A stretch of 64,000 bases of DNA from Ranitomeya imitator (GCF_032444005.1 NC_091283.1:191704001-191768000), one strand, 5' to 3'. Counted from the stretch's first letter, positions 3,030 to 55,870 are shown. The notes: generated by a model not told the origin, from the sequence alone. Program-made: numbers and translations.

Positions 3030-3092
3030 AGTAAAGACATCAGTGCCCAGCAGCAGGAGGATCTGATGAAGCTGGTGTCTGAGCTGCAAGGG
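3030..3092 (+). CDS. ARHGAP4: ARHGAP4 exon ([21 protein letters not shown]), F-BAR
   Basis: ccccgcag|AGT...GGG|gtgagt; 63 nt, phase 0-0; matches srGAP F-BAR segment. Confidence 0.9.
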
Positions 3093-39982: not shown

Positions 39983-40037
<55 letters not shown>

Positions 40038-43000
40038 ATCGATCTGTTATCTATCTATCTATCTATCTATCATCGATGTGTTATCTGTTATCAATCCATT
40101 ATCTATCTATCTATATATTATCTATCATTTATGTATCTATTATCTATTAGCTATCTATCTATGTTTTTTTCAGAGCTGGAAACAGTGGAGGCTTTGGCAA
40201 AGTTTGACTACTTGGCTCGAACTCCTCAGGAACTTTCATTCAAAAAGGGTGATTTGATTGTCTTGCACAGTAAGGCGTCTGGTGACTGGTGGAGAGGGGA
40301 GTCCGGAGGGCAGCGAGGCCTGGTCCCTCACAAGTATATCAACATTCCTGAGGGGTAAGAGATGGTCAGAAGGAATATGGAAACTCTGCAGCACTAAAAG
40401 TTTGGGGTCTTAGCTCCTGAGAACATTGTGCTTGTGATCTTGTGGAAGCCTCACACTGGGCAGCTGGTGATCATTGGTTGTAGCCACTGTCTTCATAGAG
40501 GTGATGACCACCAGCTCTCCATTGTAAGGACCCTGCAAAACATCCCATATCCCACCATAACGGCCCCTGTGCGTGTTATATTAGAATGAAAAAAAAGCAA
40601 GTTGTATTCTATATGTATATATAAAATATGGCCTGCTCACTAATTTTATAGCTCAGAGAAGAAGCTGGAGCAACGAGCTCTCAGGAAGGAAGCGGAGTCC
40701 AGCACAGCCGTCACACCAGACGATATTGTTGAACCCAGCAGGTAAGAGATCAGCTCGCTGGGTGTTGGGCATTTGCCTCCTAGCGTGCTGTGGTGTCTCC
40801 TCACCTGATGACAGATCTGGCAGGAGGGTATGCCCACACAAACCCTTCAACAAACCGTTCTATAATTAAAAAAAACGGACTTGGGGAAAAAAAAGAAGGT
40901 AAACAGGTTACCAGTAATCTGAGCAGCAGCGCTCAATACCAAGCAGCAGCTGCATAAAAAAGTACAATCTCAATTTCCTTAAAATGATATATAAAACATG
41001 TGCCTTGAATATCATTTTGTCCCTATAAATGCTATCTAAGGCTACAATCTTGAGCAAGAAGGCACTTCTGTAACAATATTGCAGGAACTGGAGCGGAAAA
41101 ACATTTGGGTGTGCAGTAAGGTAGTTGTATTGTTATGTAGGAAAGGGTTCTTTACAGTATAAATAGTTAATCTTTGGAATGATGTAGTAGAGTTGACACT
41201 CTAACCAATGTTTTCTCATAATTCTCTTAGGTTACGAGTAAATTCTGATAGCGCGTGCTCCCCCAGAAAACGCAGTGAGGGAAGCCCTATCCGAAAAATC
41301 AGCCCATTCATGGACGCATCCAGGATTCCTTTTCCTATGGCTCATCCTGGTCCAAGGCTGCTAAGTCACATTGAAAGGCAAGATGGAAGACAGGAGTAAA
41401 AGACATGAATATCTATCTTACTATTATCTATCTATCTATCTATCCATTATCTATCTATTATCTAACATGTATTATTNNNNNNNNNNNNNNNNNNNNNNNN
41501 NNNNNNNNNNNNNNNNNNNNNNNNNNNNNNNNNNNNNNNNNNNNNNNNNNNNNNNNNNNNNNNNNNNNNNNNNNNNNNNNNNNNNNNNNNNNNNNNNNNN
41601 NNNNNNNNNNNNNNNNNNNNNNNNNNNNNNNNNNNNNNNNNNNNNNNNNNNNNNNNNNNNNNNNNNNNNNNNNNNNNNNNNNNNNNNNNNNNNNNNNNNN
41701 NNNNNNNNNNNNNNNNNNNNNNNNNNNNNNNNNNNNNNNNNNNNNNNNNNNNNNNNNNNNNNNNNNNNNNNNNNNNNNNNNNNNNNNNNNNNNNNNNNNN
41801 NNNNNNNNNNNNNNNNNNNNNNNNNNNNNNNNNNNNNNNNNNNNNNNNNNNNNNNNNNNNNNNNNNNNNNNNNNNNNNNNNNNNNNNNNNNNNNNNNNNN
41901 NNNNNNNNNNNNNNNNNNNNNNNNNNNNNNNNNNNNNNNNNNNNNNNNNNNNNNNNNNNNNNNNNNNNNNNNNNNNNNNNNNNNNNNNNNNNNNNNNNNN
42001 NNNNNNNNNNNNNNNNNNNNNNNNNNNNNNNNNNNNNNNNNNNNNNNNNNNNNNNNNNNNNNNNNNNNNNNNNNNNNNNNNNNNNNNNNNNNNNNNNNNN
42101 NNNNNNNNNNNNNNNNNNNNNNNNNNNNNNNNNNNNNNNNNNNNNNNNNNNNNNNNNNNNNNNNNNNNNNNNNNNNNNNNNNNNNNNNNNNNNNNNNNNN
42201 NNNNNNNNNNNNNNNNNNNNNNNNNNNNNNNNNNNNNNNNNNNNNNNNNNNNNNNNNNNNNNNNNNNNNNNNNNNNNNNNNNNNNNNNNNNNNNNNNNNN
42301 NNNNNNNNNNNNNNNNNNNNNNNNNNNNNNNNNNNNNNNNNNNNNNNNCCATCTTTATATCTATCTTGAGACGTTATATGTAAATTGATATTATGACCTA
42401 ATAATAATTATATTATGATACTATTTTTTATTCGGTTACTTTTTTTTTTTTTACATTTGCTTTGTTTTGTCTTACCAGAACACCAGGGGAGAGGAGAAAC
42501 CATATGGACGGTGTGCCTAAGGGGACATTTGCAATGAAAACCTGGCAAAGCGATCGTCAAGGCATAGAAGTAGATAAGGTCATTACTTTAATGTGGTTGT
42601 GAAAAAAAGTGAAAATAGAAAACAGAGGGGAAGCTGGCGGTCCTATGTGCTGTCATACGGATGCTGCCTTGATCACCATCTTTGTCAACATTCACACACC
42701 ACTGCTGAAACGGCGGATGTTGAATTTGTGTTCATATCCAGTTAAAATACTACAGCTTAGCACTGGAAGTGTTGTCATAGGGCAAACAGACGTCTGCAGC
42801 TTTATTCAGTGCTATATTGGTAGTTTTTTTTTATCTTCTACTATGTTGTAAGTTATCATATATACTGGGGTGTAGCTAGTGTCGGACTGGGGCACAAAGG
42901 GCCTTTCAGTAACCAACTGCGGGGCACCAGTTTTTAGCTACATGCAAATGTGACAATCACAAATGTATATAACAATGATCTGGGTAGATTGCTAACTGAA

Positions 43001-43513
43001 TAAGATGCCGCCTTTGTCTGTACATAGTGATTCAAGTATATTGTGCCCAGCACTGCTCATATAAGAGGGTGGTGGCCCACCGGAGGATTCTCCTGCTCTT
43101 GTGTGGGCCAGTCCGAGCCTGGGTGTAGCTATAGGGGGGGTTAGAGGAACCAGTCACCCAACCCTGGAGCCCAATGAGTATTGTAGGGCAGATTTTGCAG
43201 GAGATCCAGGTTCTGCATCTGCTCATAGCCTGGCGGGACCTCCATGTAGACCTTCCATGAGTAATAATCTAAAATATTGCATTTTTGTCCCCCCTCTACA
43301 TGACAGGATGTGACAAAAAACATGGACAGTGTTTTCAAGGAGCTGTTGGGTAAAGCAGCGCACAGACACGGCGTCGGGGAAGAAGCAAGTGAAGTCACCA
43401 AAGCAGGGAAGCCCCGGGAGACTAAACCTCATGCACCAAGCGCATTCGAGCAAGTACGCGGGAGCCCAGCGGGCAAAAAGGGACCTCAAGGAAGAGCCGT
43501 ATTTCGAAGATGA
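3030..43513 (+). CDS. ARHGAP4: Rho GTPase-activating protein 4 (srGAP family), 5'-partial; join(3030-3092,14592-14774,14939-15067,15151-15372,15460-15561,16532-16726,17512-17596,19375-19402,21623-21725,27555-27615,28345-28422,29400-29534,36923-37025,37439-37672,39778-39854,40174-40354,40652-40741,41231-41395,42479-42578,43307-43513)
   Basis: The 20 exons have AG/GT (one GC) boundaries and compatible phases, totalling 2541 nt = 846 aa + stop. Motifs: [13 protein letters not shown], Rho[15 protein letters not shown] (Arg finger) and [25 protein letters not shown]3 AKFDY...ELSFKKGD...DWWRG...GLVPHKYI. The C-terminal [16 protein letters not shown] is diagnostic of ARHGAP4 versus SRGAP1-3. Confidence 0.93.
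3387..4071. mobile_element. MITE, probably PIF/Harbinger-type, with long palindromic arms and a central telomere-like array
   Basis: TAA|GGCTGGTTTCAGATTTGCG...CGCAAATGTGAAACTAGCC|TTA; arms rich in AAACGC; centre (CCCTAA)n/CCCTAGGGAT. Confidence 0.75.
5035..6375 (+). repeat. 28-bp minisatellite (CATGGCTCCTTATCCCCATCCTTGTCTG)n split by a solo LTR
   Basis: Tandem units at 5035-5202 and 5989-6375. Confidence 0.9.
5203..5988 (-). mobile_element. Solo LTR, Gypsy chromovirus family related to the 30486-36272 element
   Basis: TG...CA termini. The reverse complement starts TGTTGTGAATT and ends TCATAACA like the full element's LTRs, and internal homology is visible. CATGGC is duplicated at both flanks. 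Confidence 0.88.
7557..9161 (-). mobile_element. Tc1-like DD34E transposon, full length; transposase 8795-7773 with one in-frame TGA
   Basis: TA TSD, ~200-bp TIRs (CAGTGGGGCAAAAAAGTATTTAG), paired-HTH N-terminus, WSDETK / QHDNDPKH / SPDLNPIE with 34-residue D-E spacing. Confidence 0.95.
9492..9595 (+). repeat. 17-bp tandem repeat (CACATCACATGCGCGAC) x6
   Basis: Directly visible. Confidence 0.85.
11290..12863 (-). mobile_element. Tc1-like transposon (DD34E, QDNARPH type), frameshifted
   Basis: TA TSD, TIR CACTGCTCAAAAAAATAAAGGGAACACT; transposase pieces 12566-12051 and 11999-11547 ([22 protein letters not shown]). Confidence 0.92.
13201..13325 (-). mobile_element. L2-like LINE 3' fragment
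   Basis: The reverse strand encodes ...[20 protein letters not shown], a typical L2 RT C-terminus. Confidence 0.65.
13545..14510 (+). repeat. ~65-70-bp degenerate minisatellite (ACCATACAGTGCAAGGATAAAATACCGTACTGTGCCTAAATAGCAGTGTCATACATTGCCTAAAT...)
   Basis: More than ten tandem diverged units immediately upstream of exon 14592. Confidence 0.85.
14592..14774 (+). CDS. ARHGAP4: ARHGAP4 exon (AMKTYQLYH...[14 protein letters not shown])
   Basis: gacag|GCC ATG AAG...GAGAAG|gtaagg; 183 nt. Confidence 0.93.
14939..15067 (+). CDS. ARHGAP4: ARHGAP4 exon ([19 protein letters not shown]...DVSDLID)
   Basis: tttttag|AGG...GAT|gtaggt; 129 nt. Confidence 0.93.
15151..15372 (+). CDS. ARHGAP4: ARHGAP4 exon ([11 protein letters not shown]...[16 protein letters not shown])
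   Basis: cggcag|TGT...GAG|gtatgg; 222 nt. Confidence 0.93.
15460..15561 (+). CDS. ARHGAP4: ARHGAP4 exon (VLEVRSE...[14 protein letters not shown])
   Basis: cttctccag|GTG...GAG|gtacgt; 102 nt. Confidence 0.92.
16532..16726 (+). CDS. ARHGAP4: ARHGAP4 exon ([13 protein letters not shown]...STESLKS...[10 protein letters not shown])
   Basis: ttttcag|GTG...ACG|gtgaga; 195 nt. Confidence 0.93.
17512..17596 (+). CDS. ARHGAP4: ARHGAP4 exon ([28 protein letters not shown]) with GC donor
   Basis: ttttag|AAA...AAAG|gcaagt; 85 nt, ends phase 1. Confidence 0.88.
17958..18353 (+). repeat. 99-bp tandem repeat x4
   Basis: Units start at 17958, 18057, 18156 and 18255 and are near-identical. Confidence 0.92.
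18470..19060. mobile_element. Palindromic TTAA MITE (T2/Kolobok-like); related copy at about 28700-29110
   Basis: TTAA-AGTGTAACC start; inverted arms around the centre at about 18760. Confidence 0.6.
19375..19402 (+). CDS. ARHGAP4: ARHGAP4 28-nt exon ([10 protein letters not shown])
   Basis: tttccattttcctctgcag|CT...GG|gtatgt. Phase 1-2; it bridges the flanking exons in frame. Confidence 0.8.
20031..20845. mobile_element. Non-coding insertion with direct and inverted terminal repeats (Penelope-like architecture)
   Basis: 423-bp-period direct repeat followed by a ~220-bp inverted arm; flanked by a duplicated CTATCCAATGGATAGTT (20014-20030, 20846-20862). Confidence 0.55.
21623..21725 (+). CDS. 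ARHGAP4: ARHGAP4 exon ([34 protein letters not shown])
   Basis: ggtttcag|G...CAG|gtaccc; 103 nt, phase 2-0; RPSSQYN motif. Confidence 0.9.
23950..24960 (+). repeat. 44-bp minisatellite with a 132-bp higher-order repeat core
   Basis: GCATGACACC... monomers; three variant monomers recur in fixed order at about 24088-24480. Confidence 0.85.
25429..25456 (+). CDS. ARHGAP4: Candidate alternative (mutually exclusive) microexon of ARHGAP4, (G)RRRYLSRAK
   Basis: Long pyrimidine tract, ctctgcttgcag|G AGA...AAG|gtacat. Phase 2-0, the same as exon 21623-21725. TGCATG lies at 25483. Confidence 0.65.
26300..26920 (+). repeat. ~155-bp tandem repeat x4
   Basis: AGTCTGAA...GCTAGCTACTTCC units starting near 26307, 26461, 26627 and 26781. 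Confidence 0.85.
27555..27615 (+). CDS. ARHGAP4: ARHGAP4 exon ([20 protein letters not shown]), RhoGAP start
   Basis: cacccag|AGT...CACG|gtgggt; 61 nt. Confidence 0.93.
27734..28259. mobile_element. T2/Kolobok-type MITE; family copies also at about 7126-7506, 45420-45766, 46471-46828, 50184-50480 and 58256-60041
   Basis: TTAA flanks, AG..ACCTRTCAC termini, shared internal inverted motif AGGAACAAAAGAAAAACATCGCCGGATTCAGGAGAACAGCGGCATTTAC. Confidence 0.75.
28345..28422 (+). CDS. ARHGAP4: ARHGAP4 exon ([26 protein letters not shown]), arginine finger
   Basis: ttctatag|GT...AGAG|gttcgt; 78 nt. Confidence 0.94.
29400..29534 (+). CDS. ARHGAP4: ARHGAP4 exon (GEDRLD...[18 protein letters not shown]...LSSL)
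   Basis: tttccag|GT...CTCC|gtgagt; 135 nt. Confidence 0.94.
30639..30645 (+). promoter_or_regulatory. LTR TATA box (TATTTAA); copy at 35632-35638
   Basis: Lies about 30 nt upstream of the inferred R start that pairs with the PBS. Confidence 0.6.
31416..32237 (+). CDS. Gypsy gag (capsid-like + CCHC knuckle)
   Basis: 273-aa ORF; [14 protein letters not shown] zinc knuckle; apparent 1-nt frameshift near 32225 before the protease. Confidence 0.9.
   Translation: MDIQGLSSCVDHLTARVQNIQDFVVQNPMLEPRIPIPDLFSGDRSKFLNFKNNCKLFLALKPRSSGNPVQQVKIIISLLRGDPQDWAFSLAPGDPALRDVDAFFLALGLLYDEPNSVDQAEKILLALCQGQDEAEVYCQKFRKWSVLTQWNECALAAIFRKGLSEALKDVMVGFPTPAGLNESMFLAIQIDRRLRERKTVHHLAVFSEHRPEPMQCDRTLTRVERQEHRRQNGLCFYCGDSTHAISDCPKRTKRFARSATIGTVQSKFLLPLL
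32264..35638 (+). CDS. Gypsy pol: protease-RT-RNase H-integrase-chromodomain
   Basis: FVDSGA, YLDD, DAS...ELLA, HHCC, D-D35-E, GPY motif, [10 protein letters not shown]...YLVKWKGY...NSW chromodomain. Confidence 0.95.
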   Translation: MAFVDSGAALNLMDLEFARRCGFFLEPLQHPIPLRGIDATPLAKNKPQYWTQLTMSMAPAHQEDIRFLVLHNLHDVVVLGLPWLQVHNPVLDWKSMSVSGWGCQGVHGDVPLLSISSSTPSEVPEFLSDYRDVFEEPKSGALPPHRDCDCAINLIPGSKFPKGRLFNLSVPEHAAMRSYIKESLEKGHIRPSSSPLGAGFFFVAKKDGSLRPCIDYCLLNKITVKFQYPLPLLSDLFARIKGASWFTKIDLRGAYNLVRIKQGDEWKTAFNTPEGHFEYLVMPFGLSNAPSVFQSFMHDIFREYLDRFMMVYLDDILVFSDDWESHVKQVRMVFQVLRANSLFVKGSKCLFGVPKVSFLGFIFSPSTIEMDPVKVQAIYDWTQPTSGKSLQKFLGFADFYRRFIANFSSVAKPLTDLTKKGADVVNWSSAAVEAFQELKRHFSSAPVLCQPDVSLPFQVEVDASEIGAGAVLSQRSSDCSVMKPCAFFSRKFSPAERNYDVGNRELLAMKWAFEEWRHWLEGAKHRVVVLTDHKNLTYLESAKRLNPRQARWSLFFSRFDFVVSYFPGSKNVKADALSRSFVPDSPDVPEPAGILKEGVILSAISPDLRRVLQKFQADRPDRCPAEKLFVPDRWTSRVISEVHCSVLAAHPGIFGTRDLVARSFWWPSLSRDVRSFVQSCGTCARAKPCCSRASGLFLPLPVPKRPWTHISMDFISDLPVSQRMSVIWVVCDRFSKMVHLVPLSKLPSSSDLVPLFFQHVVSLHGIPENIVSDRGSQFVSRFWRSFCAKMGIDLSFSSAFHPQTNGQTERTNQTLETYLRCFVSADQDDWVSFLPLAEFALNNRASSATLVSPFFCNSGFHPRFYSGQVESSDCPGVDTVVDRLQQIWTHVVDNLTLSQEKAQRFANRRRCVGPRLRVGDLVWLSSRHVPMKVSSPKFKPRFIGPYKISEVLNPVSFRLALPASFAIHNVFHRSLLRRYVAPMVPSVDPPAPVLVEGELEYVVEKILDSRISRQKLQYLVKWKGYGQEDNSWVFASDVHAAVLVHAFHLARPDRPGGSGEGSVTPPQGGGGTVVNSVIDLPPVVMNGTSASSVHGLPLVAVSCAAASEVPSTGDGVYSLAGCSI
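36923..37025 (+). CDS. ARHGAP4: ARHGAP4 exon ([12 protein letters not shown]...[11 protein letters not shown])
   Basis: ccatcag|AA...CA|gtaagt; 103 nt. Confidence 0.93.
37439..37672 (+). CDS. ARHGAP4: ARHGAP4 exon ([23 protein letters not shown]...GPVYEKCM...EEY)
   Basis: ttttctag|T...TG|gtgagt; 234 nt. Confidence 0.95.
37816..39535 (+). mobile_element. Degenerate Frog Prince-like Tc1 transposon, 3'-truncated, with a solo LTR in its left TIR
   Basis: TA|CAGTTGTGTGAAAAAGTGTTTGCCCC; remnant [24 protein letters not shown]...[11 protein letters not shown]; QQDNDPK remnant; many frameshifts. Confidence 0.85.
37928..38505. mobile_element. Solo LTR (578 bp)
   Basis: TGTCACG...TGACA; ATAAG/ATAAC flanks; it interrupts a contiguous Tc1 TIR. 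Confidence 0.75.
39778..39854 (+). CDS. ARHGAP4: ARHGAP4 exon ([26 protein letters not shown])
   Basis: catttag|T...GATG|gtaaga; 77 nt, phase 2-1. Confidence 0.85.
39870..40162 (+). repeat. (TCTA)n microsatellite filling nearly the whole intron
   Basis: Directly visible. Confidence 0.95.
40174..40354 (+). CDS. ARHGAP4: ARHGAP4 SH3 exon
   Basis: ttttcag|AG...GG|gtaaga; [22 protein letters not shown]...DWWRGE...GLVPHKYI. Confidence 0.95.
40652..40741 (+). CDS. ARHGAP4: ARHGAP4 exon ([12 protein letters not shown]...IVEPSR)
   Basis: ttttatag|C...AG|gtaaga; 90 nt, phase 2-2. Confidence 0.85.
41231..41395 (+). CDS. ARHGAP4: ARHGAP4 exon ([23 protein letters not shown]...ERQDGRQ)
   Basis: ctcttag|G acceptor, open frame, weak phase-2 donor GA|gtaaaa; 165 nt. 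The donor is less certain, and an assembly gap follows. Confidence 0.7.
41477..42348. other. Assembly gap (N run) inside a TCTA microsatellite
   Basis: N bases. Confidence 1.
42479..42578 (+). CDS. ARHGAP4: ARHGAP4 exon (TPGERRN...RQGIEVDK)
   Basis: cttaccag|A...AAG|gtcatt; 100 nt, phase 2-0; ends in EVDK. Confidence 0.88.
43307..43513 (+). CDS. ARHGAP4: ARHGAP4 last coding exon ([16 protein letters not shown]...RAVFRR*)
   Basis: gacag|GAT...TGA; [12 protein letters not shown] motif. Confidence 0.92.
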   Translation, partial: DVTKNMDSVFKELLGKAAHRHGVGEEASEVTKAGKPRETKPHAPSAFEQVRGSPAGKKGPQGRAVFRR

Positions 43514-44588: not shown

Positions 44589-47500
44589 TTAATAGGGCTA
44601 AGTTGATCCTTAATGTAAAAATAATCATTGTTGTCAAATGGTGTTACTTTTAGTGGTATCCACCTACTTGTACTCCATGTGACCACTTTGTTTAAAAGTT
44701 CTGTTGCCGCGGGTTATGTTTGCCCACAGCCATACAGTACATTTTGGTGGTTTCGCATGTGCGGTACTGTTTTCAATCTACATTATACTCCCTATACTAT
44801 GCAGCTGAAAATCTAAGAAAACTACGTGTGTGATGTGACGAGATGGGGAACTGTAGGCCATTGTGTCTCAGCGCACAATTTGGAGCACATTTTGGGAATT
44901 CTACACCGAATTTTTAATTAGGATATGAAATTTACAAAAAAAAAGTACTTTTGTGTAATAATAAATTAGCAGATTAGATTCCTTGCCACCAATTTCAAAG
45001 CCTACTTTGCGTAATGGGAAAACCCCTTTAATGACCTTCGATGGACGTTGCTTCTCTAGAATTAAAGGGTTACACAGACCAAGGAGCAAAGCCATATGGC
45101 AGCTACATGGGCTTCTGAGAGGGGTCTCAGTCATGATTCCTTCACCTTTCGGTATTGGGTAACAAAACTTATCAGGCATTTTTGTATTGTGTGGAAAAAC
45201 TCAATACCATAATGGAGGCCTATATGGCTTTCTGTAATGTTAACTCAAAACAAAACTGAAAGTAAAACTATCCTTGTTGCCGATAGCAACCAATCAGAGC
45301 TGCGCATTCATTTCTTAAACTGTTCAGGTAAAATGAAAGCTGAGAGCTGATTAGTTGCTATGGGAAACAGACAGTTTTCATATAACTGCCCTACTGAGTG
45401 TGATATTGGGGTCACTTAAAGATGGCCTGTCACTTGCCATAAATATATATATTTTTCTCCTAGTGTAAATCACGCTGTTTTCCTGAGTCTGACATTGCTT
45501 TTCTTTTCTTCCTGCTCCTCTCAATTCCCTGTATATAAATCTAGCCTTTTTTGGCCAAATAGGTGTGGTCTTGAGCTCTTCTCTATTGGCATCTTTTGGA
45601 GGACCACGCCCAGTTGGCCAAAAAAGACGATTTATATACAACAGAGCCATATCTCGGGAATGGATAGGAGCAGGAACAAATGAAAAGCAAGGCTGGATTC
45701 AGGAGAATCTCAACATTTACATGAGGTAAAAAAAAGGCATATTTATAGCGAGTGACAGGTCCTCTTTTTTAATAACGATACAATACAATCTATGGATAAA
45801 GGTGGCACTGTTTCTAGAAGAAAGCGGCCATGTTTTTGTAGTATTGGACAACCCCTTTTAAACGTTGTCTAAAGACGTCTCAAGGCTCATACATGACAGA
45901 TATCGCTTACTAATAAAGTGACTTGACTTTAATGTGACACTTTTGTCTTTATAAAATTTCCATATTATGTAAAATTTCAAAAGACCGGAGTCCAAATTAT
46001 TCCAGATTAAAGGAATTTTACTGCTTTCCATACACTTATATCAGTAACGAGATATTCTAAATGTATTCTTCAGGCATATGCCAAATTATTGACAGTGCAG
46101 GGTGCCCTTTTTTCAAGATATATTGGTTACCCATATTCAGCCATCTATGGACCATGGTCCTATGGACCATGTTGCTCAGACTGGTCACAGGTTTTCCTGA
46201 CTCGAACTTGACAGCGTCTTGTACACGTCTGAAGGAGGCTCAAAATGCAGCTCTAAAAACTTTTGTTTGGGAGGATTCGGTAAGTTCAGTCATGATGATT
46301 TCATTAGGAACTGGGTAACACTCCACTTCTCCTGTTGTGGTGGAACACAAAAACTAGACTTACTGCGGGGAAAACGTGTAATCTACCGATCAATGGGGCC
46401 ACCTTCTTACAAAAAGTCACTTTTCAACCAGGCATCCCCTTTAATATGAACCGCCCCAAAAAACTCTTAAAGGCGACCTTTTCATTTTCATAAATTTTTA
46501 ACTTTTTTACCTGGTATAAATACCACTGTTCTGCTGAATATGGGGTCACTTTTCTTTTCTTTCTACTCCTCTCCGTTCTGGAGATATGGCCTTCTGCTTT
46601 ATGTATATAAACCCAGACTTGTTAGCCAAGGAGGCCGGAACCTCTATGTGAGCGTTTTCTCGATGATCACACCCACTTGGCTAACAAGACTAAATTTATA
46701 TATAGAGAAGAAGGAGTTATATCTCAGGAATGGAGAGGCACAGGAAAAAAAAGAAAAAACAGCTCCGGATTCAGTGGCTTTTACAAAAGGTTAAATATAT
46801 ATATATTTATGACAAGTGAAGGGTCCTCATTAGAGAAATATGCTATCCCGTGTTGATTTTTACATGATTATTTTTGTCTCTCATCTTTTTCCATTCAATA
46901 ACCTCTAATTATAAGGATGTAACAGAGCTGAGCTGTACCGATAGATGCCATATTCCGTGCTCTGCCTATAATAAGCACATAGTCATGCTGGAAAGCAAAA
47001 ATAACATTTAGTAAAAGTTGCAGGAGGGTGCATAGAAGCAAATAAAATTCACAAGAGTAGGAAAATCTCTGCCTAAAGTCTGCTATTGGAGGGAACCTAA
47101 ATCAGGCAGATTTTCTGCCTGATCATATCCGTATCAAGAGATAAGTGGCGCCACATTGTCCAGGTGCCACTTATTACTCCCTAAACCCACCAATGATGAG
47201 TGGTTGACCATTATTTTATAGCTATTTCTCCAGCAAAATAAACCATACAATATATACACAAAACATTTTTTTATTATCATCCAGGAATGAGATCTTCTCG
47301 TCTATGAGGCAGCTTACGGTTTCAATACATTTCCCATATTAATGGCACAAAAGACATGTGAGGGTTCTTTTTATGGACCTGGCACTTTTTTTCTTAGATC
47401 GTCTGTTCTTGTAGTTTTGCTTGTGGTTAAAGTCTTTTTGCTGTATGTGCATCATTTTCAAACCTCGCCCTACAGTTTTATCGCCCTCTGTCACTGCTTT

Positions 47501-47660
47501 TATCTTGGCATAACTCGGCACTCTGGCAGTTGGGTTACCGAAGCTCTAGGGTACCCATGTTCGGTGTGCCTTATCTGTTTGTAACCGTACACTATCCCAT
47601 ATCTTACTGTGATCTTCAAGTTATGGAGAATAGTTTGACTTCTTGAGTTCGGAGCCCATA

Positions 47661-47813
47661 TGGAGTCTTGGAAGAACGTCTTCGCATTGATCTTCTGCGG
47701 CTATAGATGTGTGGAGTCTAGGAAGAACGTCTTCACATTGATCTTCTGCGGCTATAGGTCTGTGGAGTCTTGGAAGAACGTCTTCACATTGATCTTCCGT
47801 GGCTATAGATGCA
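47661..47813 (+). repeat. 51-bp tandem repeat x3
   Basis: TGGAGTCTTGGAAGAACGTCTTC... units. Confidence 0.85.
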
Positions 47814-48055
47814 TAAGACTATATAACAGAGGCCTTTTACCCTATACTCCTGTGCCAGTTCTCACCAAAATACAGCTGTTTGTGCATACAGAGAAATGCC
47901 AATAAAACATGGTATTTATACCCACTTTTGTTTTGCGTGCTTCTTTGGGTTAGGTCAGCCTAAATTGGGTCCATTGGCATCATGATATTTTTAATTGGGC
48001 ATACTTAGTTGGCAGCTTCCCCCAATGCCATTGTCTATTGGTGCCAATTTGGTTT

Positions 48056-48397
48056 TCACACTTCTTTTCTGAGGGCCACACGGATGCCACCAAGTGCTTT
48101 ACCCACGGCCTCAAAGATTGGGTCACAGAAGGTACGGAGACAAGCGGCATAGAACTGGCCCAGGCATTGGATTTCCATTTGGTAACTCTTGACGCAAGGG
48201 ACTACAGCCCAGATGTGACAGAATGAAAGGCAAGCGAAAAGGAAGCCCCACAGAAGGGCCAGCGGAATGCCAAAAACAGCAGAGATCACTCGGTAAAACC
48301 AGTATTTGGTGACGGTAAAGGTGGTGTTGCTAGCCTTCCACACGCCGTCAAAGCTGTGAATGCTATCTGGTTCAGCGATTACATCCTCGAAATCCAC
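48056..48397 (-). CDS. Caveolin last coding exon ([10 protein letters not shown]...LRKEV*)
   Basis: FEDVIAEP signature; AG acceptor with branch-like CTTAAC upstream. Confidence 0.95.
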
Positions 48398-51300
48398 CTG
48401 TAAGAGATGACATGGACCAGTTAAGACCACTGCACTGTGGAACATTATACAGTTAGGGCCAGAAATATTTGGACAGTGACACAAGTTTTGTTATTTTAGC
48501 TGTTTACAAAAACATGTTCAGAAATACAATTATATATATAATATGGGCTGAAAGTGCACACTCCCAGCTGCAATATGATAGTTTCCACATCCAAATCGGA
48601 GAAAGGGTTTAGGAATCATAGTTCTGTAATGCATAGCGTCCTCTTTTTCAAGGGACCAAAAGTAATTGGACAATGGACTCTAAGGGCTGCAATTAACTCT
48701 GAAGGCGTCTCCCTCGTTAACCTGTAATCAATGAAGTAGTTAAAAGGTCAGGGGTGGATTCCAGGTGTGTGGTTTTGCATTTGGAAGCTGTTGCTGTGAG
48801 CAGACAACATGCGGTCAAAGGAACTCTCAATTGAGGTGAAGCAGAACATCCTGAGGCTGAAAAAAAAGAAAAAATCCATCAGAGAGATAGCAGACATGCT
48901 TGGAGTAGCAAAATCAACAGTTGGGTACATTCTGAGAAAAAAGGAATTGACTGGTGAGCTTGGGAACTCAAAAAGGCCTGGGCGTCCACGGATGACAACA
49001 GTGGTGGATGATCGCCGCATACTTAATTTGGTGAAGAAGAACCCGTTCACAACATCAACTGAAGTCCAGAACACTCTCAGTGAAGTAGGTGTATCTGTCT
49101 CTAAGTCAACAGTAAAGAGAAGACTCCATGACAGTAAATACAAAGGGTTCACATCTAGATGCAAACCATTCATCAATACCAAAAATAGACAGGCCAAAGT
49201 TAAATTTGCAGAAAAACACCTCAAGAAGCCAGCTCAGTTCTGGAAAAGTATTCTATGGACAGATGAGACAAAGATCAACCTGTACCAGAATGATGGGAAG
49301 AAAAAAGTTTGGAGAAGAAAGGGAACGGCACATGATCCAAGGCACACCACATCCTCTGTAAAACATGGTGGAGGCAACGTGATGGCATGGGCATGCATGG
49401 CTTTCAATGGCACTGGGTCACCTGTGTTTATTGATGACATAAGAGCAGACAAGAGTAGCCGGATGAATTCTGAAGTGTACCGGGATATACTTTCAGCCCA
49501 GATTCAGCCAAATGCTGCAAAGTTGATTGGACGGCGCTTCATAGTACAGATGGACAATGACCCCAAGCATACAGCCAAAGCTACCCAGGAGTTCATGAGT
49601 GCCAAAAAGTGGAACATTCTGCAATGGCCAAGTCAATCTCCAGATCTAAACCCAATTGAGCATGCATTTCACTTGCTCAAATCCAGACTTAAGACGGAAA
49701 GACCCACAAACAAGCAAGACCTGAAGGCTGCGGCTGTAAAGGCCTGGCAAAGCATTAAGAAGGAGGAAACCCAGCGTTTGGTGATGTCCATGGGTTCCAG
49801 ACTTAAGGCAGTGATTGCCTCCAAAGGATTTGCAACAAAATATTGAAAATAAAAATATTTTGTTTGGGTTATGTTTATTTGTCCAATTACTTTTGACCTC
49901 CTAAAATGTGGAGTGTTTGTAAAGAAATGTGTACAATTCCTACATTTTCTATCAGATATTTTTGTTCAACCCTTCAAATTAAACGTTACAATCTGCACTT
50001 GAATTCTGTTGTAGAGGTTTCATTTCAAATCCAATGTGGTGGCATGCAGAGCCCAACTCGCGAAAATTGTGTCACTGTCCAAATATTTCTGGCCCTAACT
50101 GTATACTGTTAGCTGGCTAGTAGTAGCTTAGTGTGGCTTATATATACAGTATAATCTTCCAAGGTTAGGTTAGATGGTCTTAGAAAGAACCTATCACTTG
50201 TCATATATAGAAAATGTTTTATATGGTGTAAATGCCGCTGTTCTCCTGACTCCGGCAATGTTTTTGTTTTCTTCCTGCGCTTCTCCATTCCTGAGATATG
50301 GCCCTCTCTTCCCTGTGTATTAATGTAGTCTTCTTAGCCAAGTGGGTGATGTGTTAAGAAGACTTTCACAGAGAATAGTTGAGGACCATGCCCATTTGGC
50401 TTACAATACTAAATTTATATACAAGAAAGAAGGGGCCATTCTCAGTAACAGAGAGGTTTATGTTCTTAGACTAGAAGGGGGGCCAATATCACTGGCTTTT
50501 TCCCAGGCTATTAATATCAGTCCACAGCTGTCTGTTTAGCCTTTGCTGGTTAGATGTTATAGGGGGACCCTACATACTTTTTTTCTGGGGTCCCCCTGTA
50601 AACTAACCAGTAAAGATTAAGAAAACAGCTGTAAGCTATTATTAATAGCCTGTGAACCGTTTGGGTTGTTGGCCCCTTTCCCTGATTATTAACATCAGCC
50701 CCCAGCGATCAGCTTTCCCTCTGCTGGTATGAAAATTATGAGGGAGCACACCATTTTTTAAAAAATGGTTTCTGTTAAACACGATGTACACAGCGGGTGC
50801 TGAATACAACTCCCATACTTGCCGCCTGTCACGCTCATCGCACGGAGACCAAGTGACAATGATGAGAGCTCAGGACATGGTGCCCGGGAACAGCACGAAC
50901 TGCATCGCTTTTTCCCAGGCGCCAATGCGTGTCACACTGATGACACATGAATGTCATCTTTGTGCACGTGTGCGGGATGTTTTCCGGCCTGTGGTCCCTG
51001 GAAACACATTGACGTATGCACAGACCCACTCAGCTAAAGGGGTCTATGTGGGCAAGTGTCTCCGGTACGCGTGAAAACCGTCACCACACCTACGTGTACA
51101 TGTGAAGGAGGTCTCACAGAAAGTCCACTCAAGTCTCATCAGTCACTCAGGCTGAATCTCTGTCCTTCCTACCTTCAAGATGGATTACTTTTTTACATTT
51201 TTGTTTCTAAACTTCTTCCTAGCATTCGAACTGTTTATTTTTCCATTGACAAGGCCACACCACATAGATGCTTGCTTATCATTGTTGACACAGAGAAAGC

Positions 51301-54300
51301 ACAGCAATTCTGACAATGGGGTTTGAATAGTGCATTATCTTTTTTTAGGCTTCCATAAACCTCCCTCAGCACTCTGGTATATACTGGCAATGAGTCTCCT
51401 AAAAGAACATGGCGTCAACCTCGAACTCCACCTCTGCAATGAGATATTGGGTGTATAGGAGCATTGCCCTTGCCCTCTATCTTGCCAGGGGGCGGTGCCC
51501 TCCTGAAGATTGACAGCTCGCACCTGTGGCATGTTAGAACTGTAAGCTCTCCCATGCCGCAAGCTTTGCAGGGGCACTGAACGAGGCCAAATCCACCCAT
51601 CTGGCCAAAATCAGCAGGGGCAGGGCTGCAGTCACACAAGGACCCTGGAGCTTAGGGAGGCCCAAAAAAGTCCCACATGAGAAAACAATACTATTAAAGA
51701 CCCACAATAGATGGGGGCACTGAGAGTTTGCATTTGTACCCATAAGGTTTAAAGGTACCTTAGTTATGCAACTGGCTTGCAAACCTGTGCTTCTTGTGTA
51801 GGAAACCGGCTACCGCTGATTAACTGCAGAGGTGGACGGTAAACAGCAAAATGTATACTATAGAATTAAAAATCATTTTGTTTCTGAGAACGGACAGAAT
51901 TATTAATACAAATTAAATTGCAAAACTTCTTCTTTTTATACGAAATTTGATATTTTACCCATTTAACAAGATGAGACTTACAACCATGGACGATAGCTGT
52001 CATGAAGAAACAACCCCTTTAAGGCATTACAACCATAGTCACATGGGCTGACGATAGCTGTAATGATATGAGACAACCCCTTTAAGGCTACGTGACCGTA
52101 GATCCATCTGTGTAGACGTGTAAAGTCCAGGCACACGCTGACCACAGAGTCACGGAGGGCCGGTCTGAACAGAGTCTTATTCCTTTAGGCCAAGCCTTGT
52201 GGTTGATCACTGGTATACCGTATTATCAATTTCAGATTGGAGGGGGGGGGGGGATGGGAGATTGGCCCCCGTGATTATTGCTTTATCTCAGCTCTGAAAA
52301 CCTCCAGAAACTTAAGTGTGCAGAGAATTAAAAGCTTTGCACTTTTACATTAATTAGCTTTTTGCGCAGTGTGAACATTGCATCGCCACCTTTTTAGTAT
52401 GAAGAGTTATTGCTCCGGGGACGGTCGCTAAGTCGCTGCGGGATGCACTTATAAGGTGCATTAGTGCTGGGGTTTATGAGGATTCCATTAATTCCCTCTA
52501 TATATTTGTCTCTGAGCGGAGGTGGATGTGGGCAGAGTCTCCAGCTGTCAGACCTCTTCTGCGACTTGTGACAGCAGCCCCCACCAGCAGCCACACGGTG
52601 ACCAAAGCAGACCTCGTCTGCAGTGTTAAATTTACACAGATCCCGAGTGCTTAATTCACAGGCTCGCCGTACAGAGACCCTAAAACCCCACCCAATCATC
52701 TCCGTTTTACACGGCAGTGATTATTCCTGTGCCTCTTTGTTATAATAAAGCTTATTCCGCAGTTCTGAATTATTGGATGGATGACCAACGCCAGGGCTTT
52801 CTGTTCTTAAAGGGTTATTCCCATTCCCATTTTTGTAAATAGGTATTGACGGGCAGAGCTTGTAAGTACAAGCAATTTTGCAATTTACTGCTTATTAAAA
52901 TTTGCAGCTGTTCTTGAGATATTAGCACTTTTCTTTTGTTTACAGCTAGTTGCCTTGGAGACCGACCACTGCTGCTAGACGGCAGAACATGCACAGAGCT
53001 TACAATCTCTTTTCTATTGAGCTCGTAAACACTGTTGTAAAACTGGCCCAGGTCGCTGTAAATTTGTAACCCCAGTCAGCTTTAGCACAGTGCTATCCAA
53101 TATTTCTTATCCAATCTATTTTTTTTCTAATCTCTTACAACACACTTCAAGTATATAGCACAAGCATTTATAACCAAGTACAGGGAAAAGTGGAGACCTT
53201 CCAGAAAAGTTGTCAAATCTCTTTGGTGCCTCCAAAAACTTGTGCAAAAGTTTCTGGTTTGTGATAATGGGATGCTGTCATTAGGGAGAACCACTGGTGT
53301 CCAAACGCACATTCAGAGGTGAGTATTGGGGTGTAGAGGGGGCACGGGCTGGAAGAAGGGGGAACGTTAATGTGTGTGGGGAAGTTAGGAGAGATTGCCA
53401 TCAGATGATTGACAGCTAGTGAAAGTGCTTGGTCGGCTTTACTCTAGAAAGGCTGGTATGTTCAATGCCTCCTATAGATAATTACCCAGTAAATTAGAAG
53501 AAATCTCCGAATAAGGACATCACCAGCAATTAAGGATTGCCCAGCTGAATTATTGGAAACTGCAAGATATCATACATCACATACAGCCTTAAATTTCACT
53601 ATAATGTAAATTAAAGGGTATGTGTCTGGATACTTTTTTTACTGAAACTATTGGCATGGCTATATAGGTCCTATAAAAACAAGAAAAATGATACCTGTCT
53701 TGTAGTAATCCGATGTGCCAGTGCTGAGAAATCAAGCTTTAAAGCCACATGCAAATTAGCCTGGAAGAGCACTGTGAGGACACAGACACGCCCCAATGCA
53801 CTTCTAGGTTAAATTTGCATGTGGTTTCAAAGCTTGATTTCTCAGCAGCGGTACATCGGATTACTACAAGACAGGTATCATTTTTATCGTTGTTCTAGGA
53901 CCTATATTGTCGTACCACTAGTTTCAGTAGTTAAATTGTCCTAAAAGATCCCTTCTAAGTACCCTGGAAAAGTCATGGCACCCCCAAATGTAAAGGCATC
54001 TCCTCCATATGCCCCCCCCCCCCCCCAAAGACAAGTGTATTGTGGGGATTGGATAACTTAGAAAGTGCCCTGAATTTCTAATACAATTCTAATATGTAGC
54101 AAGGATCTTAAAGGGGTTGTCCATGACCTAGGTGATCAATAAAAAGATTAGTGAGGGTCCTGGGTGTCAGACCACCACTGATTTTATATGCAGACCAGCT
54201 CCTATTATCTTCAATAAGAGCTGACCTGCAGTACACGGTAGGGGCCACTTCACAGACTACAGAGCTGTGGGGTCCTGCTCTGTTCACTGTTTACATCCAG

Positions 54301-55170
54301 CCCCGAGAAGAACGGTGGAGGGAACCAAAGGGTAGAAGTAGTGGACAAGTCCTTCGTTCATGGATGATAGAGTAGCTTTATTAAGCAATGGATAGATAAG
54401 GATGGAAAGATAGANNNNNNNNNNNNNNNNNNNNNNNNNNNNNNNNNNNNNNNNNNNNNNNNNNNNNNNNNNNNNNNNNNNNNNNNNNNNNNNNNNNNNN
54501 NNNNNNNNNNNNNNNNNNNNNNNNNNNNNNNNNNNNNNNNNNNNNNNNNNNNNNNNNNNNNNNNNNNNNNNNNNNNNNNNNNNNNNNNNNNNNNNNNNNN
54601 NNNNNNNNNNNNNNNNNNAGATAGATGATAAATAGATAATAGGTAATTAATAGATGATAGATAGATAAATGATAGATAATAGATAGATAGATGATAGATA
54701 AATAGATAATTGATAGATAATAGATAAATACATGATAGATAATATATAGATAATAGAGCTATAGATATATAGATAATAGATCTATAGATAGATGATAGAT
54801 AATAGATCTATAGATAATAGATAAATAATAGATAATAGATCTGTAGATACATAATAGATAGATGATAGATAATAATGATAGATTATACATAGATAGATAA
54901 TAGATGATAGATAGATAATAGATAAATAGATAATAGATAGATGATAGATAAATAGACAACAGATAGATATTATTCTTGTGTCAGTCCTCGGATAGACTTC
55001 ATGTTCCTATGTAATATTACAATCTTCCATACACTTCACTTCTCTCTCACCTGCACCACGTCCTGGTTGATATTTTTAGGGTCCCTCTGTACTAAGTCGA
55101 TCTCCTTGGTGAGGGTGTCAGGGAGGGTCTTGCTCTCCTTCGCAGGCTCCGGGTGCTGGATTTGGGCCAT
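48056..55170 (-). CDS. Caveolin family protein (CAV1/CAV3-like paralogue), complement(join(48056-48397,55051-55170)), 153 aa; possible upstream in-frame ATGs at 55260 and 55302
   Basis: [20 protein letters not shown]|[10 protein letters not shown] signature, scaffolding domain [20 protein letters not shown], hydrophobic hairpin, HIWAVVPC, C-terminal LRKEV. Donor CAG|gtgaga at 55051 and acceptor cttacag|GTG at 48397, at the conserved caveolin intron position. Confidence 0.93.
48450..50101 (+). mobile_element. Tc1-like DD34E transposon with intact transposase
   Basis: TA TSD; TIR CAGTTAGGGCCAGAAATATTTGGACAGTGACACAA; inner inverted pair AAAGTAATTGGACAA. Confidence 0.96.
48809..49846 (+). CDS. 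Tc1 transposase, 345 aa, uninterrupted
   Basis: [30 protein letters not shown] (D34E). Confidence 0.95.
   Translation: MRSKELSIEVKQNILRLKKKKKSIREIADMLGVAKSTVGYILRKKELTGELGNSKRPGRPRMTTVVDDRRILNLVKKNPFTTSTEVQNTLSEVGVSVSKSTVKRRLHDSKYKGFTSRCKPFINTKNRQAKVKFAEKHLKKPAQFWKSILWTDETKINLYQNDGKKKVWRRKGTAHDPRHTTSSVKHGGGNVMAWACMAFNGTGSPVFIDDIRADKSSRMNSEVYRDILSAQIQPNAAKLIGRRFIVQMDNDPKHTAKATQEFMSAKKWNILQWPSQSPDLNPIEHAFHLLKSRLKTERPTNKQDLKAAAVKAWQSIKKEETQRLVMSMGSRLKAVIASKGFATKY
53600..53960. mobile_element. Hairpin MITE (T2-like)
   Basis: Long inverted arms AATGATACCTGTCTTGTAGTAATCCGATGT / ACATCGGATTACTACAAGACAGGTATCATT. Confidence 0.65.
54390..54965 (+). repeat. (GATA)n microsatellite containing an assembly gap (54415-54618)
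   Basis: Directly visible; N run. Confidence 0.95.
55051..55170 (-). CDS. Caveolin first coding exon ([11 protein letters not shown]...[20 protein letters not shown])
   Basis: Kozak context aacATGG; phase-0 donor gtgaga. Confidence 0.9.
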
Positions 55171-55870
55171 GTTCTGTTCCTTGGTGTTTCTTACTAACTT
55201 CTTACCCTGTCGGCGTCCTGCAGCTTCTGCTGGTGAGGCTCTGCCCAGAGTGCTGCCCATGTCCAGAGGAGCCGCCCTATCCCATTTACCACTGGAGAAC
55301 ATCCCAGCACCAGGATCTGGAGCTCGCTGACTGTGACTCTGACTCTACACACATCATTGTATAGTTTTACATTGTGATTATCCAACTACATCTACGGTAC
55401 TTTTAGGAACTGTACATGGGTTGGAGAGCTAAGGGCAGGTGGCTGACTGCAGGTGTGAAGTTTTCTCATATGTACATCACTATACAGTGGCTTGAGAAAG
55501 TATTCACCCCCTTGGCTTTCTAACTATTTTGTTACATTATAACCTGTGTTTAAATATTTTTGTAATTTGATTTGTGTGTGATGCATCAGTAAAAAATAGT
55601 CTAAAGTTGGTGAAGTGAGAAAAATATAGGCATAGATTACATTTATGGGATCAAACAACTAAAAATTGGCATGTACAGTACGTATGTATTCACATCTTTT
55701 GAAGCCCCTAAAAATTTCTGGTAAAAACTATTTCCTTCATAAGTCTCATGCTTAGTGACAGGACGTCCCCCTGTGTGCAATCTAAGTGTCACATGTCTGT
55801 CAGTATATACACTTTACCTTTTCTGAAAGGCCACAGAGGCTGCAACACCATTAACAAGAGGAGCCACTAA

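What the first reader, a model, noticed from the sequence alone, without database searches (positions are those of the whole stretch)
48056..55302. Extra caveolin paralogue tail-to-tail with ARHGAP4, a likely whole-genome-duplication ohnologue missing from the mammalian locus
Seen: a complete two-exon caveolin converges on the ARHGAP4 3' end, 4.5 kb stop-to-stop. It is a mosaic: a CAV1-like scaffolding domain ([15 protein letters not shown]; CDP-FEAVGK) with CAV3-like KNIN-D and LRKEV. Established: in human, ARHGAP4 is tail-to-tail with AVPR2 at Xq28 with no caveolin there, whereas its paralogue SRGAP3 lies near, and convergent with, CAV3. Inference: this is the ARHGAP4-linked copy of an ancestral srGAP-caveolin block, a fourth vertebrate caveolin lost in mammals. 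It may correspond to fish/amphibian genes called cavY or cav4 (name from memory).
Basis: partly seen in the sequence, partly recalled or inferred. Interest (0 to 1): 0.72.

Follow-up and report, generated by a model that had tools for sequence, protein, structure and literature searches.

The report
Frog CAV3-like caveolin beside ARHGAP4
This poison-frog window carries an intact, expressed copy of "CAV3-like", a third muscle-type caveolin that has sat tail-to-tail with ARHGAP4 since before sharks and bony vertebrates split; mammals lack it at that site, and it has been named in print only in passing.

Summary
A two-exon, 153-aa caveolin lies on the minus strand (CDS 55170-55051 and 48397-48056). 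Its stop codon is 4.5 kb from the stop codon of a convergent gene that is a true ARHGAP4 orthologue, not SRGAP3. The assembly gap (54415-54618) sits in the intron next to an (AGAT)n array and touches no coding sequence.

The protein belongs to a strongly supported clade with frogs, a caecilian, snakes, lungfish, coelacanth and bichir. This clade is separate from CAV3 and CAV1, which the same species also carry. The caveolin-to-ARHGAP4 arrangement recurs in Xenopus, rattlesnake, bichir and a skate. True CAV3 instead faces OXTR in a teleost and the elephant shark. A bat has ARHGAP4 facing AVPR2 with no caveolin between them, and alligator also lacks a caveolin there.

The 2R-ohnologue reading therefore fits the published chromosome 1 / 3 / 7+12 / X paralogon, although the tree root is unresolved. 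The "cavY" name guess is wrong. The clade was published as "CAV3-like" in a 2026 paper on squamate gene loss, so this is a new member of a known kind. Transcript-like contigs from two studies stop matching exactly at the predicted splice acceptor. Our scan had not noted this gene on other DNA.

The parts
55051..55170 (-). Caveolin (CAV3-like) exon 1 coding part, 40 codons, from the conserved start ATG at 55170-55168; donor GT at 55050-55049
   Evidence: Sequence read. The N-terminus matches 153-aa frog orthologues P0001-P0006. The 5' end of the exon is not defined.
48056..48397 (-). Caveolin exon 2 coding part, 113 codons plus stop TGA at 48058-48056; acceptor AG at 48399-48398
   Evidence: Pfam PF01146 E=2.1e-46. 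Gapless match to CAV1 7SC0 residues 66-178. Contigs of runs X1 and X2 stop matching at 48400 and run on for 276 and 144 letters.
48398..55050 (-). Single phase-0 intron, 6,653 nt as assembled
   Evidence: The intron sits at the same position in X. laevis (14,829 nt) and Crotalus (5,187 nt) orthologues.
47300..48055 (-). 3' UTR, minimum extent; the X1 contig runs a further 505 letters beyond 47300
   Evidence: X1 record 1 is an 1,882-nt contig laid on 47300-48400 with 3 differences.
54415..54618 (.). Assembly gap (N), intronic, beside the degenerate (AGAT)n array at 54619-54969
48809..49846 (+). Intact 345-aa Tc1/mariner transposase ORF inside the caveolin intron, on the opposite strand
   Evidence: Pfam HTH_Tnp_Tc3_2 8.5e-21 and DDE_3 4.6e-17. 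Very high repeat depth over 48434-48900.
3027..43513 (+). ARHGAP4, residues about 138-978 of the dendrobatid protein; the 5' exons lie outside the window; stop at 43511-43513; convergent with the caveolin
   Evidence: tblastn of P0121. 97-99% identity to dendrobatid ARHGAP4 on clean exons. Family tree.
40174..40353 (+). ARHGAP4 SH3-domain exon
   Evidence: Best solved-structure match is the human ARHGAP4 SH3 domain 2EPD at 78 bits, against SRGAP2 68 and SRGAP1 61.
55300..55302 (-).
   Evidence: ORF 55036-55302. Orthologue annotations do not include it. Use untested.

Best explanation
The gene is the dendrobatid-frog orthologue of the vertebrate 'CAV3-like' caveolin. This is a third Cav1/Cav3-type (CavX-derived) caveolin, and its ancestral position is tail-to-tail with ARHGAP4. 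The lineage predates the split of cartilaginous and bony vertebrates. It most likely arose in the two early vertebrate genome duplications as the Xq28-type paralogon's counterpart of CAV3 (3p25: SRGAP3-OXTR-CAV3) and CAV1 (7q31).

It survives in skates, bichirs, coelacanth, lungfish, caecilians, frogs, tuatara and squamates. It is gone from the ARHGAP4-AVPR2 interval of a placental mammal and from the alligator locus.

Shown here: an intact two-exon ORF, strong purifying selection, transcript-like contigs, and full-length colinearity with the part of CAV1 that builds the 11-mer membrane disc.

Inferred: it works as a canonical caveolin. It would be inserted in the cytoplasmic leaflet, oligomerise into discs and, with cavins, shape caveolae. 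It may co-assemble with the Cav2-like gene that lies just upstream of it in Xenopus and rattlesnake, as CAV1 does with CAV2.
For: Gene model and family membership.

Clade: 100/99 split and 99/99 clade with an outgroup. Latimeria (P0016, P0415, P0443) and frogs each have three genes.

Synteny with an FCH-RhoGAP-SH3 gene:
- X. laevis
- Crotalus
- bichir
- skate, whose neighbour P0202 falls in the ARHGAP4 clade

CAV3 faces OXTR in a cyprinid and in Callorhinchus. CAV3 shares a scaffold with SRGAP3 in Callorhinchus, Heptranchias and Phyllobates.

Bat: RENBP-NAA10-ARHGAP4 facing AVPR2 (537 bits to V2R against 242 to OXTR), with no caveolin. Alligator has no caveolin either.

The SRGAP and OT/VP-receptor families belong to one 2R paralogon on human chromosomes 1, 3, 7+12 and X (PMC3826523).

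Selection: dN is 0.09 against X. laevis with dS saturated; Xenopus-Crotalus dN/dS is 0.04.

Expression: contigs from two studies match exon 2 plus the 3' UTR, stop at the acceptor and do not enter the intron.
Against: - The root of the Cav1/Cav3/CAV3-like tree is not resolved. The distant Cav2-like outgroup attaches inside teleost CAV3, an evident long-branch artefact. CAV3 itself is not recovered as one clade.
- A tetrapod-level duplication is not rejected by the 151-column protein alignment alone (AU p=0.12). It is excluded only by bichir and skate synteny.
- The skate copy is very divergent (branch 2.06, FEAVMAEP motif), and its clade membership is merely not rejected (p=0.29).
- The runs are only guessed to be RNA. 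They are contigs, and the letters beyond the acceptor were not shown, so the exon 1-exon 2 junction is not directly read.
- Tissue is unknown.
- No Cav2-like partner lies within the 8.7 kb upstream that the window holds.
- The human map positions of CAV1 and CAV3 are from memory, not tested here.
- Loss in birds, turtles, salamanders and teleosts rests only on absence from two capped searches.
Confidence: 0.85

Rival explanations
1. It is a recent, frog- or tetrapod-specific duplicate of CAV3 that landed next to ARHGAP4.
For: NCBI names the orthologues 'caveolin-3-like' or 'caveolin-3'. It has the same two-exon structure and short N-terminus as CAV3. The AU test does not reject tetrapod CAV3-like plus tetrapod CAV3 as one clade (p=0.12).
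Against: A frog-level duplication is rejected (delta lnL 48.5, p=0.003). Bichir, coelacanth and lungfish sequences fall in the same clade. Bichir and skate show the same caveolin-ARHGAP4 convergence. Coelacanth has both genes.
Confidence: 0.04
2. It is an ancient paralogue, but it arose by a local or segmental duplication before or after 2R rather than by whole-genome duplication. The ARHGAP4 linkage would then be secondary.
For: The tree root is unresolved, and CAV3 is paraphyletic in every tree. Only three of four expected paralogon copies exist. V2-type and V1/OT-type receptors themselves derive from a pre-2R tandem pair (PMC3826523).
Against: Each caveolin locus has a different srGAP-family and OT/VP-receptor paralogue nearby. 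Cav2-like partners accompany the caveolin at the ARHGAP4 locus (Xenopus, Crotalus) and at the OXTR locus (Callorhinchus), as expected if a tandem CavZ-CavX pair was copied as a block.
Confidence: 0.1
3. It is the fish/amphibian gene called cavY.
For: CavY is the only 'fourth caveolin of lower vertebrates' named in most of the literature (PMC7383883).
Against: CavY is described as a separate ancestral lineage, also present in Ciona, that forms its own clade apart from Cav1/3 (PMC12330381; PMC7383883). This protein is about 64% identical to both CAV1 and CAV3 and sits among them on short branches. No CavY sequence was available here for a direct test.
Confidence: 0.01

Closest known systems
CAV3-like (e.g. 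Pogona vitticeps LOC110078681; BMC Biol 2026;24:72, PMC13005343). NCBI 'caveolin-3-like' of frogs, snakes, coelacanth and bichir.
   Same: It falls in the same clade in my trees, with Crotalus and Sphenodon sequences. It has the same two-exon structure and the same ARHGAP4-side synteny in Crotalus. The paper reports it as a clade separate from CAV3, transcribed in Pogona, and retained after squamates lost CAV3.
   Different: The paper treats it as a squamate side-note. Its text mentions neither ARHGAP4 nor AVPR2, nor a deep origin. This copy is from a dendrobatid frog. No protein closer than 91% was found, although dendrobatid ARHGAP4, CAV1 and CAV3 annotations were. It carries private C-to-F and L-to-Q changes at conserved sites.
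Caveolin-3 (CAV3)
   Same: About 150 aa, a short N-terminus, and two coding exons split before [10 protein letters not shown]. It has a CAV3-like membrane segment (GF.FAC.SFCHIW) and a LRKE-type C-terminus. Identity is 62-65%.
   Different: It is a separate clade and a separate locus: CAV3 faces OXTR on the SRGAP3 chromosome, while this gene faces ARHGAP4. Frogs, coelacanth and tuatara have both genes.
Caveolin-1 (CAV1; structure 7SC0)
   Same: It aligns without gaps over residues 66-178. It shares the FEDVIAEP motif, [11 protein letters not shown](F)YR and CDP.FEAVGK. Identity is about 64%.
   Different: It lacks the 30-residue N-terminal extension that CAV1 sequences carry. It has two rather than three coding exons. 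It is not in the CAV1 clade (100/97).
CAV2-CAV1 tandem pair / Cav2R of Kirkham et al. 2008
   Same: In X. laevis and Crotalus a 163-164-aa, three-exon Cav2-like gene lies head-to-tail just upstream of the CAV3-like gene. The same holds upstream of CAV3 in Callorhinchus.
   Different: No such partner lies within the 8.7 kb upstream in this window. Which of these partners equals the published Cav2R was not resolved, because that paper is not held.

Membership tests
Caveolin family (Pfam PF01146) | Caveolin domain above the curated threshold | tested here: met
   157.6 bits against a cutoff of 25, E=2.1e-46, profile positions 24-132 of 133.
Caveolin family (Pfam PF01146) | Signature motif FEDVIAEP and colinearity with the disc-forming region of a solved caveolin | tested here: met
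   [10 protein letters not shown] is at the start of exon 2. There is a gapless match to 7SC0 residues 66-178 at E=2.6e-52.
Caveolin family (Pfam PF01146) | Oligomerises into membrane discs and generates caveolae | not testable with these tools
   Inferred from sequence conservation only.
CAV3-like clade (ARHGAP4-linked caveolin) | Groups with CAV3-like sequences to the exclusion of CAV3 and CAV1 of the same species | tested here: met
   100/99 split. 99/99 clade with an outgroup. A frog-specific duplication is rejected at p=0.003.
CAV3-like clade (ARHGAP4-linked caveolin) | Convergent (tail-to-tail) neighbour is ARHGAP4 | tested here: met
   In the window the stop codons are 4.5 kb apart. The neighbour falls in the ARHGAP4 clade at SH-aLRT 100. 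The same layout occurs in X. laevis, Crotalus, bichir and skate.
CAV3-like clade (ARHGAP4-linked caveolin) | Two coding exons with a phase-0 intron directly before VDFEDV | tested here: met
   Window. X. laevis after codon 40 and Crotalus after codon 43.
CAV3 proper | Locus: convergent with OXTR, on the SRGAP3 chromosome | tested here: not met
   The neighbour here is ARHGAP4. CAV3 faces OXTR in Pseudorasbora and Callorhinchus. The dendrobatid Phyllobates has a separate CAV3 on its SRGAP3 chromosome.
CAV1 | Long N-terminal extension and membership of the CAV1 clade | tested here: not met
   The extension is absent in the alignment. The gene lies outside the CAV1 clade, which has 100/97 support.
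CavY | Membership of the divergent CavY clade | not tested
   No CavY sequence was retrieved. The literature places CavY apart from Cav1/3, whereas this protein is about 64% identical to both.
2R ohnologue of CAV1/CAV3 | Each copy lies beside different paralogues of the same neighbouring families | tested here: met
   ARHGAP4 against SRGAP3. AVPR2 against OXTR. The paralogon is documented in PMC3826523.
2R ohnologue of CAV1/CAV3 | Present in both cartilaginous and bony vertebrates | tested here: met
   The skate ARHGAP4-linked caveolin is shown by synteny. The tree neither supports nor rejects it (p=0.29).
2R ohnologue of CAV1/CAV3 | Rooted gene tree dates the split to the 2R interval | tested here: inconclusive
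   Root placement is an artefact and CAV3 is paraphyletic.

The most novel reading that the evidence does not exclude
Non-mammalian jawed vertebrates keep a complete third caveolin gene pair beside ARHGAP4: a Cav2-like gene plus CAV3-like. This pair would form its own caveola system with a tissue role distinct from CAV1/CAV2 and CAV3. It would be the sole muscle-type caveolin in squamates, and would have been lost independently in mammals, archosaurs and teleosts. If so, the textbook count of vertebrate caveolins (Cav1, Cav2, Cav3 and CavY) is incomplete, and Xenopus offers a direct knockout model.
Probability: 0.45. Interest if true: 0.55.

Novelty: new member of a known kind. Interest (0 to 1): 0.4.

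Why it matters
Caveolin biology rests almost entirely on mammalian CAV1, CAV2 and CAV3. Reviews state that lower vertebrates add only CavY.

This locus shows a further Cav1/3-type gene that is under strong constraint. It has been conserved in position for well over 400 million years, and mammals lack it. That gives a clean example of differential ohnologue loss in the opsin / oxytocin-vasopressin-receptor paralogon. It also explains how squamates can survive without CAV3.

It matters for interpretation as well. Cav3 knock-down phenotypes in Xenopus, and 'caveolin-3' annotations in lungfish and caecilians, may involve this second gene.

The gene's existence is already annotated and has been noted in print. 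The gain here is therefore the deep synteny, the paralogon framing and one more species, not a new kind of protein.

Tried and rejected
- SRGAP3 identity for the plus-strand gene is rejected by the family tree. Raw similarity is misleading here: fish SRGAP1 scores higher against the window than alligator or catfish ARHGAP4, because ARHGAP4 evolves fast.
- A PDB search with the RhoGAP C-terminal exon found nothing.
- A Cav2-like partner was sought in the window by tblastn; none was found.
- Rooting the caveolin tree with Cav2-like genes spliced from X. laevis and Callorhinchus loci put the root inside eel CAV3, so I disregard it.
- The skate copy could not be placed reliably.
- Context look-ups for Latimeria CAV3-like, Rhinatrema and echidna ARHGAP4 returned no record. 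X. laevis CAV3 has no neighbour within 10 kb.
- Kirkham et al. 2008 is not held. Searches for cav4/caveolin-4 and for ARHGAP4+SRGAP3+paralogon found nothing relevant.
- Long teleost hits (P0401-P0405) looked like possible fish orthologues. They are ordinary cav3 with mis-predicted N-termini. P0401 is a Cav2-like/cav3 fusion prediction.
Only the acceptor side was examined.


Full report
**What is in the sequence**

On the minus strand there is a two-exon caveolin gene. Exon 2 runs from 48397 to the stop TGA at 48058-48056 and follows an acceptor ...ctcttacAG. It matches Pfam Caveolin at E=2.1e-46. It aligns without a gap to residues 66-178 of human CAV1 in the 7SC0 disc structure at E=2.6e-52. 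Exon 1 supplies 40 codons from the ATG at 55170 (context aacATGg) to 55051, followed by GTGAGA. The intron is phase 0 and falls directly before [10 protein letters not shown].

The spliced product is 153 aa. It is 90-91% identical to 153-aa proteins of other frogs that begin with the same MAQIQ.PEPAK sequence.

**The assembly gap**

The N run at 54415-54618 lies inside the intron and abuts a degenerate (AGAT)n array at 54619-54969. It cannot disturb the reading frame; only the intron length (6,653 nt as written) is uncertain. Nothing was filled in.

Two lines of evidence indicate that the two exons belong together. The X. laevis and Crotalus orthologues have the same two-exon, phase-0 structure. 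Contigs from two studies also behave as spliced transcripts. X1 is an 1,882-nt record and X2 a 521-nt record. Both match exon 2, and X1 also matches at least 1.26 kb of 3' UTR. Both stop matching at 48400 and run on for 276 and 144 letters instead of entering the intron. The three extra matching letters are expected, because exon 1 ends in CAG just as the intron does.

These runs are only guessed to be RNA, and the overhanging letters were not shown. The junction is therefore supported, not read.

**The neighbour is ARHGAP4**

Plus-strand exons from 3027 to a stop at 43511-43513 are 97-99% identical to dendrobatid proteins that NCBI names rho GTPase-activating protein 4. The window therefore comes from a poison frog (Dendrobatidae); the closest match is Ranitomeya, and none is identical.

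Similarity alone is treacherous here. Fish SRGAP1 out-scores alligator ARHGAP4 against the window. I therefore built a family tree of 41 proteins. The frog protein sits in a clade with SH-aLRT 100. The clade includes placental, marsupial and monotreme ARHGAP4. It also includes squamate, alligator, amphibian and coelacanth ARHGAP4. The short 'SRGAP3-like' genes of gar, sturgeon, paddlefish, bichir and lungfish, a catfish arhgap4a and a skate gene belong to it too. The clade is separate from SRGAP3 (99) and SRGAP1. The SH3 exon also matches the human ARHGAP4 SH3 domain best.

**Where the caveolin belongs**

A careful ML tree of 59 Cav1/3-type proteins has a 100/99 split. On one side are the window protein, ten other frogs, Rhinatrema, Crotalus, a Sphenodon fragment, bichir 'caveolin-3-like', coelacanth 'caveolin-3-like' and the lungfish protein annotated caveolin-3. 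On the other side are all CAV3 (sharks, teleosts, coelacanth, frogs, newt, tuatara, turtles, birds, mammals) and all CAV1.

With Cav2-like genes as outgroup, the first group is a 99/99 clade. The root position itself is an obvious long-branch artefact, and CAV3 is never recovered as a single clade.

Frogs (for example Gastrophryne, Pelobates, X. laevis) and coelacanth carry CAV1, CAV3 and this gene. Forcing frog CAV3-like and frog CAV3 together costs 48.5 lnL (AU p=0.003). Forcing the tetrapod sets together costs 16.6 lnL (p=0.12), so this short alignment alone does not reject that grouping.

The window protein is about 64% identical to both CAV3 and CAV1 of a fellow dendrobatid. That explains the 'mosaic' impression. 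Its CAV1-like F in KYWFYR replaces a C that is invariant in 11 relatives. The F is genuine, because it is present in the X1 and X2 contigs.

**Synteny settles the age**

The same convergent caveolin-to-srGAP-type arrangement occurs in four other species:
- X. laevis, where the neighbour is 988 aa
- Crotalus, 898/944 aa
- bichir, 1006 aa
- the skate Rhinoraja, where a 149-aa caveolin lies 4.0 kb beyond the gene that my tree places in the ARHGAP4 clade

The skate caveolin is highly diverged and cannot be placed by sequence; membership of the clade is not rejected (p=0.29).

By contrast, CAV3 converges on a receptor that matches human OXTR far better than V2R. This holds in a cyprinid (87.6 against 42 bits) and in the elephant shark (418 against 240 bits). 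CAV3 also shares a scaffold or chromosome with SRGAP3 in Callorhinchus, Heptranchias and Phyllobates.

In the bat Molossus the order is RENBP, NAA10, ARHGAP4, then a convergent AVPR2 only 1.1 kb away (537 bits to V2R), with no caveolin. In alligator, ARHGAP4 faces a MITF/TFE-family gene.

The L-clade profile search returned no mammalian, avian, turtle, crocodilian, salamander or teleost member. Those groups' CAV3, CAV1 or ARHGAP4 proteins are in the database. This is suggestive of loss, not proof.

**Origin**

Lagman et al. 2013 (PMC3826523) place the SRGAP family and the oxytocin/vasopressin receptors in one 2R paralogon on human chromosomes 1, 3, 7+12 and X. CAV3 lies with SRGAP3 and OXTR. 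The CAV3-like gene lies with ARHGAP4 and AVPR2. From general knowledge of the human map, CAV1/CAV2 lie at 7q31. These positions fit three of the four copies.

A Cav2-like gene lies just upstream of the CAV3-like gene in Xenopus and Crotalus, and upstream of CAV3 in the elephant shark. A catfish prediction fuses a Cav2-like fragment to cav3. This is what block duplication of a tandem CavZ-CavX pair predicts. I rate a 2R origin at about 0.7; a non-WGD ancient duplication remains possible.

**Function**

dN against X. laevis is 0.09 with synonymous sites saturated. Xenopus-Crotalus dN/dS is 0.04. The signature motif, the scaffolding region, the membrane segment and the C-terminal helix region are all colinear with CAV1. 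The most likely mechanism is that of a canonical caveolin: disc-shaped oligomers in the inner leaflet that, with cavins, build caveolae. All of this is inferred. Tissue and partners are unknown.

**Comparison with what is known**

The clade has been published as 'CAV3-like' in a paper on gene loss in squamates (BMC Biol 2026;24:72). That paper shows it separate from CAV3 and transcribed in Pogona, and proposes it as the paralogue retained after squamates lost CAV3. Its text does not mention ARHGAP4, AVPR2 or a deep origin.

The gene here is thus a new member of a known kind. Earlier notes of this scan touch only the ARHGAP4 microexon and the gypsy element in this window; the caveolin had not been noted elsewhere.

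Noticed in passing
window 48809-49846 (+): An uninterrupted 345-aa Tc1/mariner transposase ORF (HTH_Tnp_Tc3_2 + DDE_3) sits in the caveolin intron. Contig depth over 48434-48900 is hundreds to tens of thousands, so the element family is abundant in the runs and possibly still active.
   Followed up: partly
window 48295-48297 and 48187-48189 (minus-strand codons F74 and Q112): There are two private substitutions at otherwise conserved caveolin positions. KYWCYR becomes KYWFYR, where the C is invariant in 11 relatives and F is the tetrapod CAV1 state. SYLMEIQC becomes SYQMEIQC. Both are present in contigs of independent runs, so they are not assembly errors.
   Followed up: partly
window 55259 and 55302 (-): Two in-frame ATGs lie upstream of the conserved start with no intervening stop. 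The X1 contig extends 276 letters beyond the acceptor, which is longer than the 120-nt coding part of exon 1. A longer N-terminal isoform is therefore conceivable, as with CAV1 alpha/beta.
   Followed up: no
L001 4811-7905 (X. laevis); L004 1-4239 (Crotalus); L007 136-4713 (Callorhinchus): Three-exon Cav2-like genes (164, 163 and 157 aa) lie head-to-tail upstream of the CAV3-like gene in Xenopus and rattlesnake, and upstream of CAV3 in the elephant shark. None lies within 8.7 kb upstream in this window. Their relation to the published Cav2R is unresolved.
   Followed up: partly
P0401 (Tachysurus vachellii, 225 aa): This annotated protein is a fusion of a Cav2-like fragment and cav3. It implies a Cav2-like gene immediately upstream of catfish cav3.
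   Followed up: no
L010 47747-52144 (Rhinoraja longicauda): The skate ARHGAP4-linked caveolin is strongly diverged: FEAVMAEP instead of FEDVIAEP, a Gly/Ala/Leu/Arg-rich sequence, and a tree branch of 2.06. Relaxed constraint, GC-biased evolution or a changed function are possible.
   Followed up: partly
window 30500-36300 (+): A Ty3/gypsy LTR retrotransposon with a 1,140-aa pol ORF (32216-35635) and near-identical flanking repeats sits in an ARHGAP4 intron.
   Followed up: no
window 41477-42348: A second assembly gap (872 N) lies inside ARHGAP4, between the exons at 41229-41387 and 42462-42587.
   Followed up: no
window 61177-63999 (+): A LINE-like element lies here: a 405-aa ORF, then an ORF with an endonuclease-type N-terminus that runs off the window end. 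Further Tc1-like transposase remnants lie at 7776-8873 and 11550-12818 (-).
   Followed up: no
protein searches: No dendrobatid CAV3-like protein is in the database, although dendrobatid ARHGAP4, CAV1 and CAV3 are. The gene may be unannotated in the published poison-frog genomes. The lungfish and Rhinatrema proteins annotated 'caveolin-3' belong to the CAV3-like clade.
   Followed up: partly
L009 (Alligator mississippiensis): Alligator ARHGAP4 (880 aa, very long branch, only RhoGAP detected by Pfam) is followed by a convergent MITF/TFE-family bHLH gene. Neither AVPR2 nor a caveolin follows it, so the region is rearranged.
   Followed up: no
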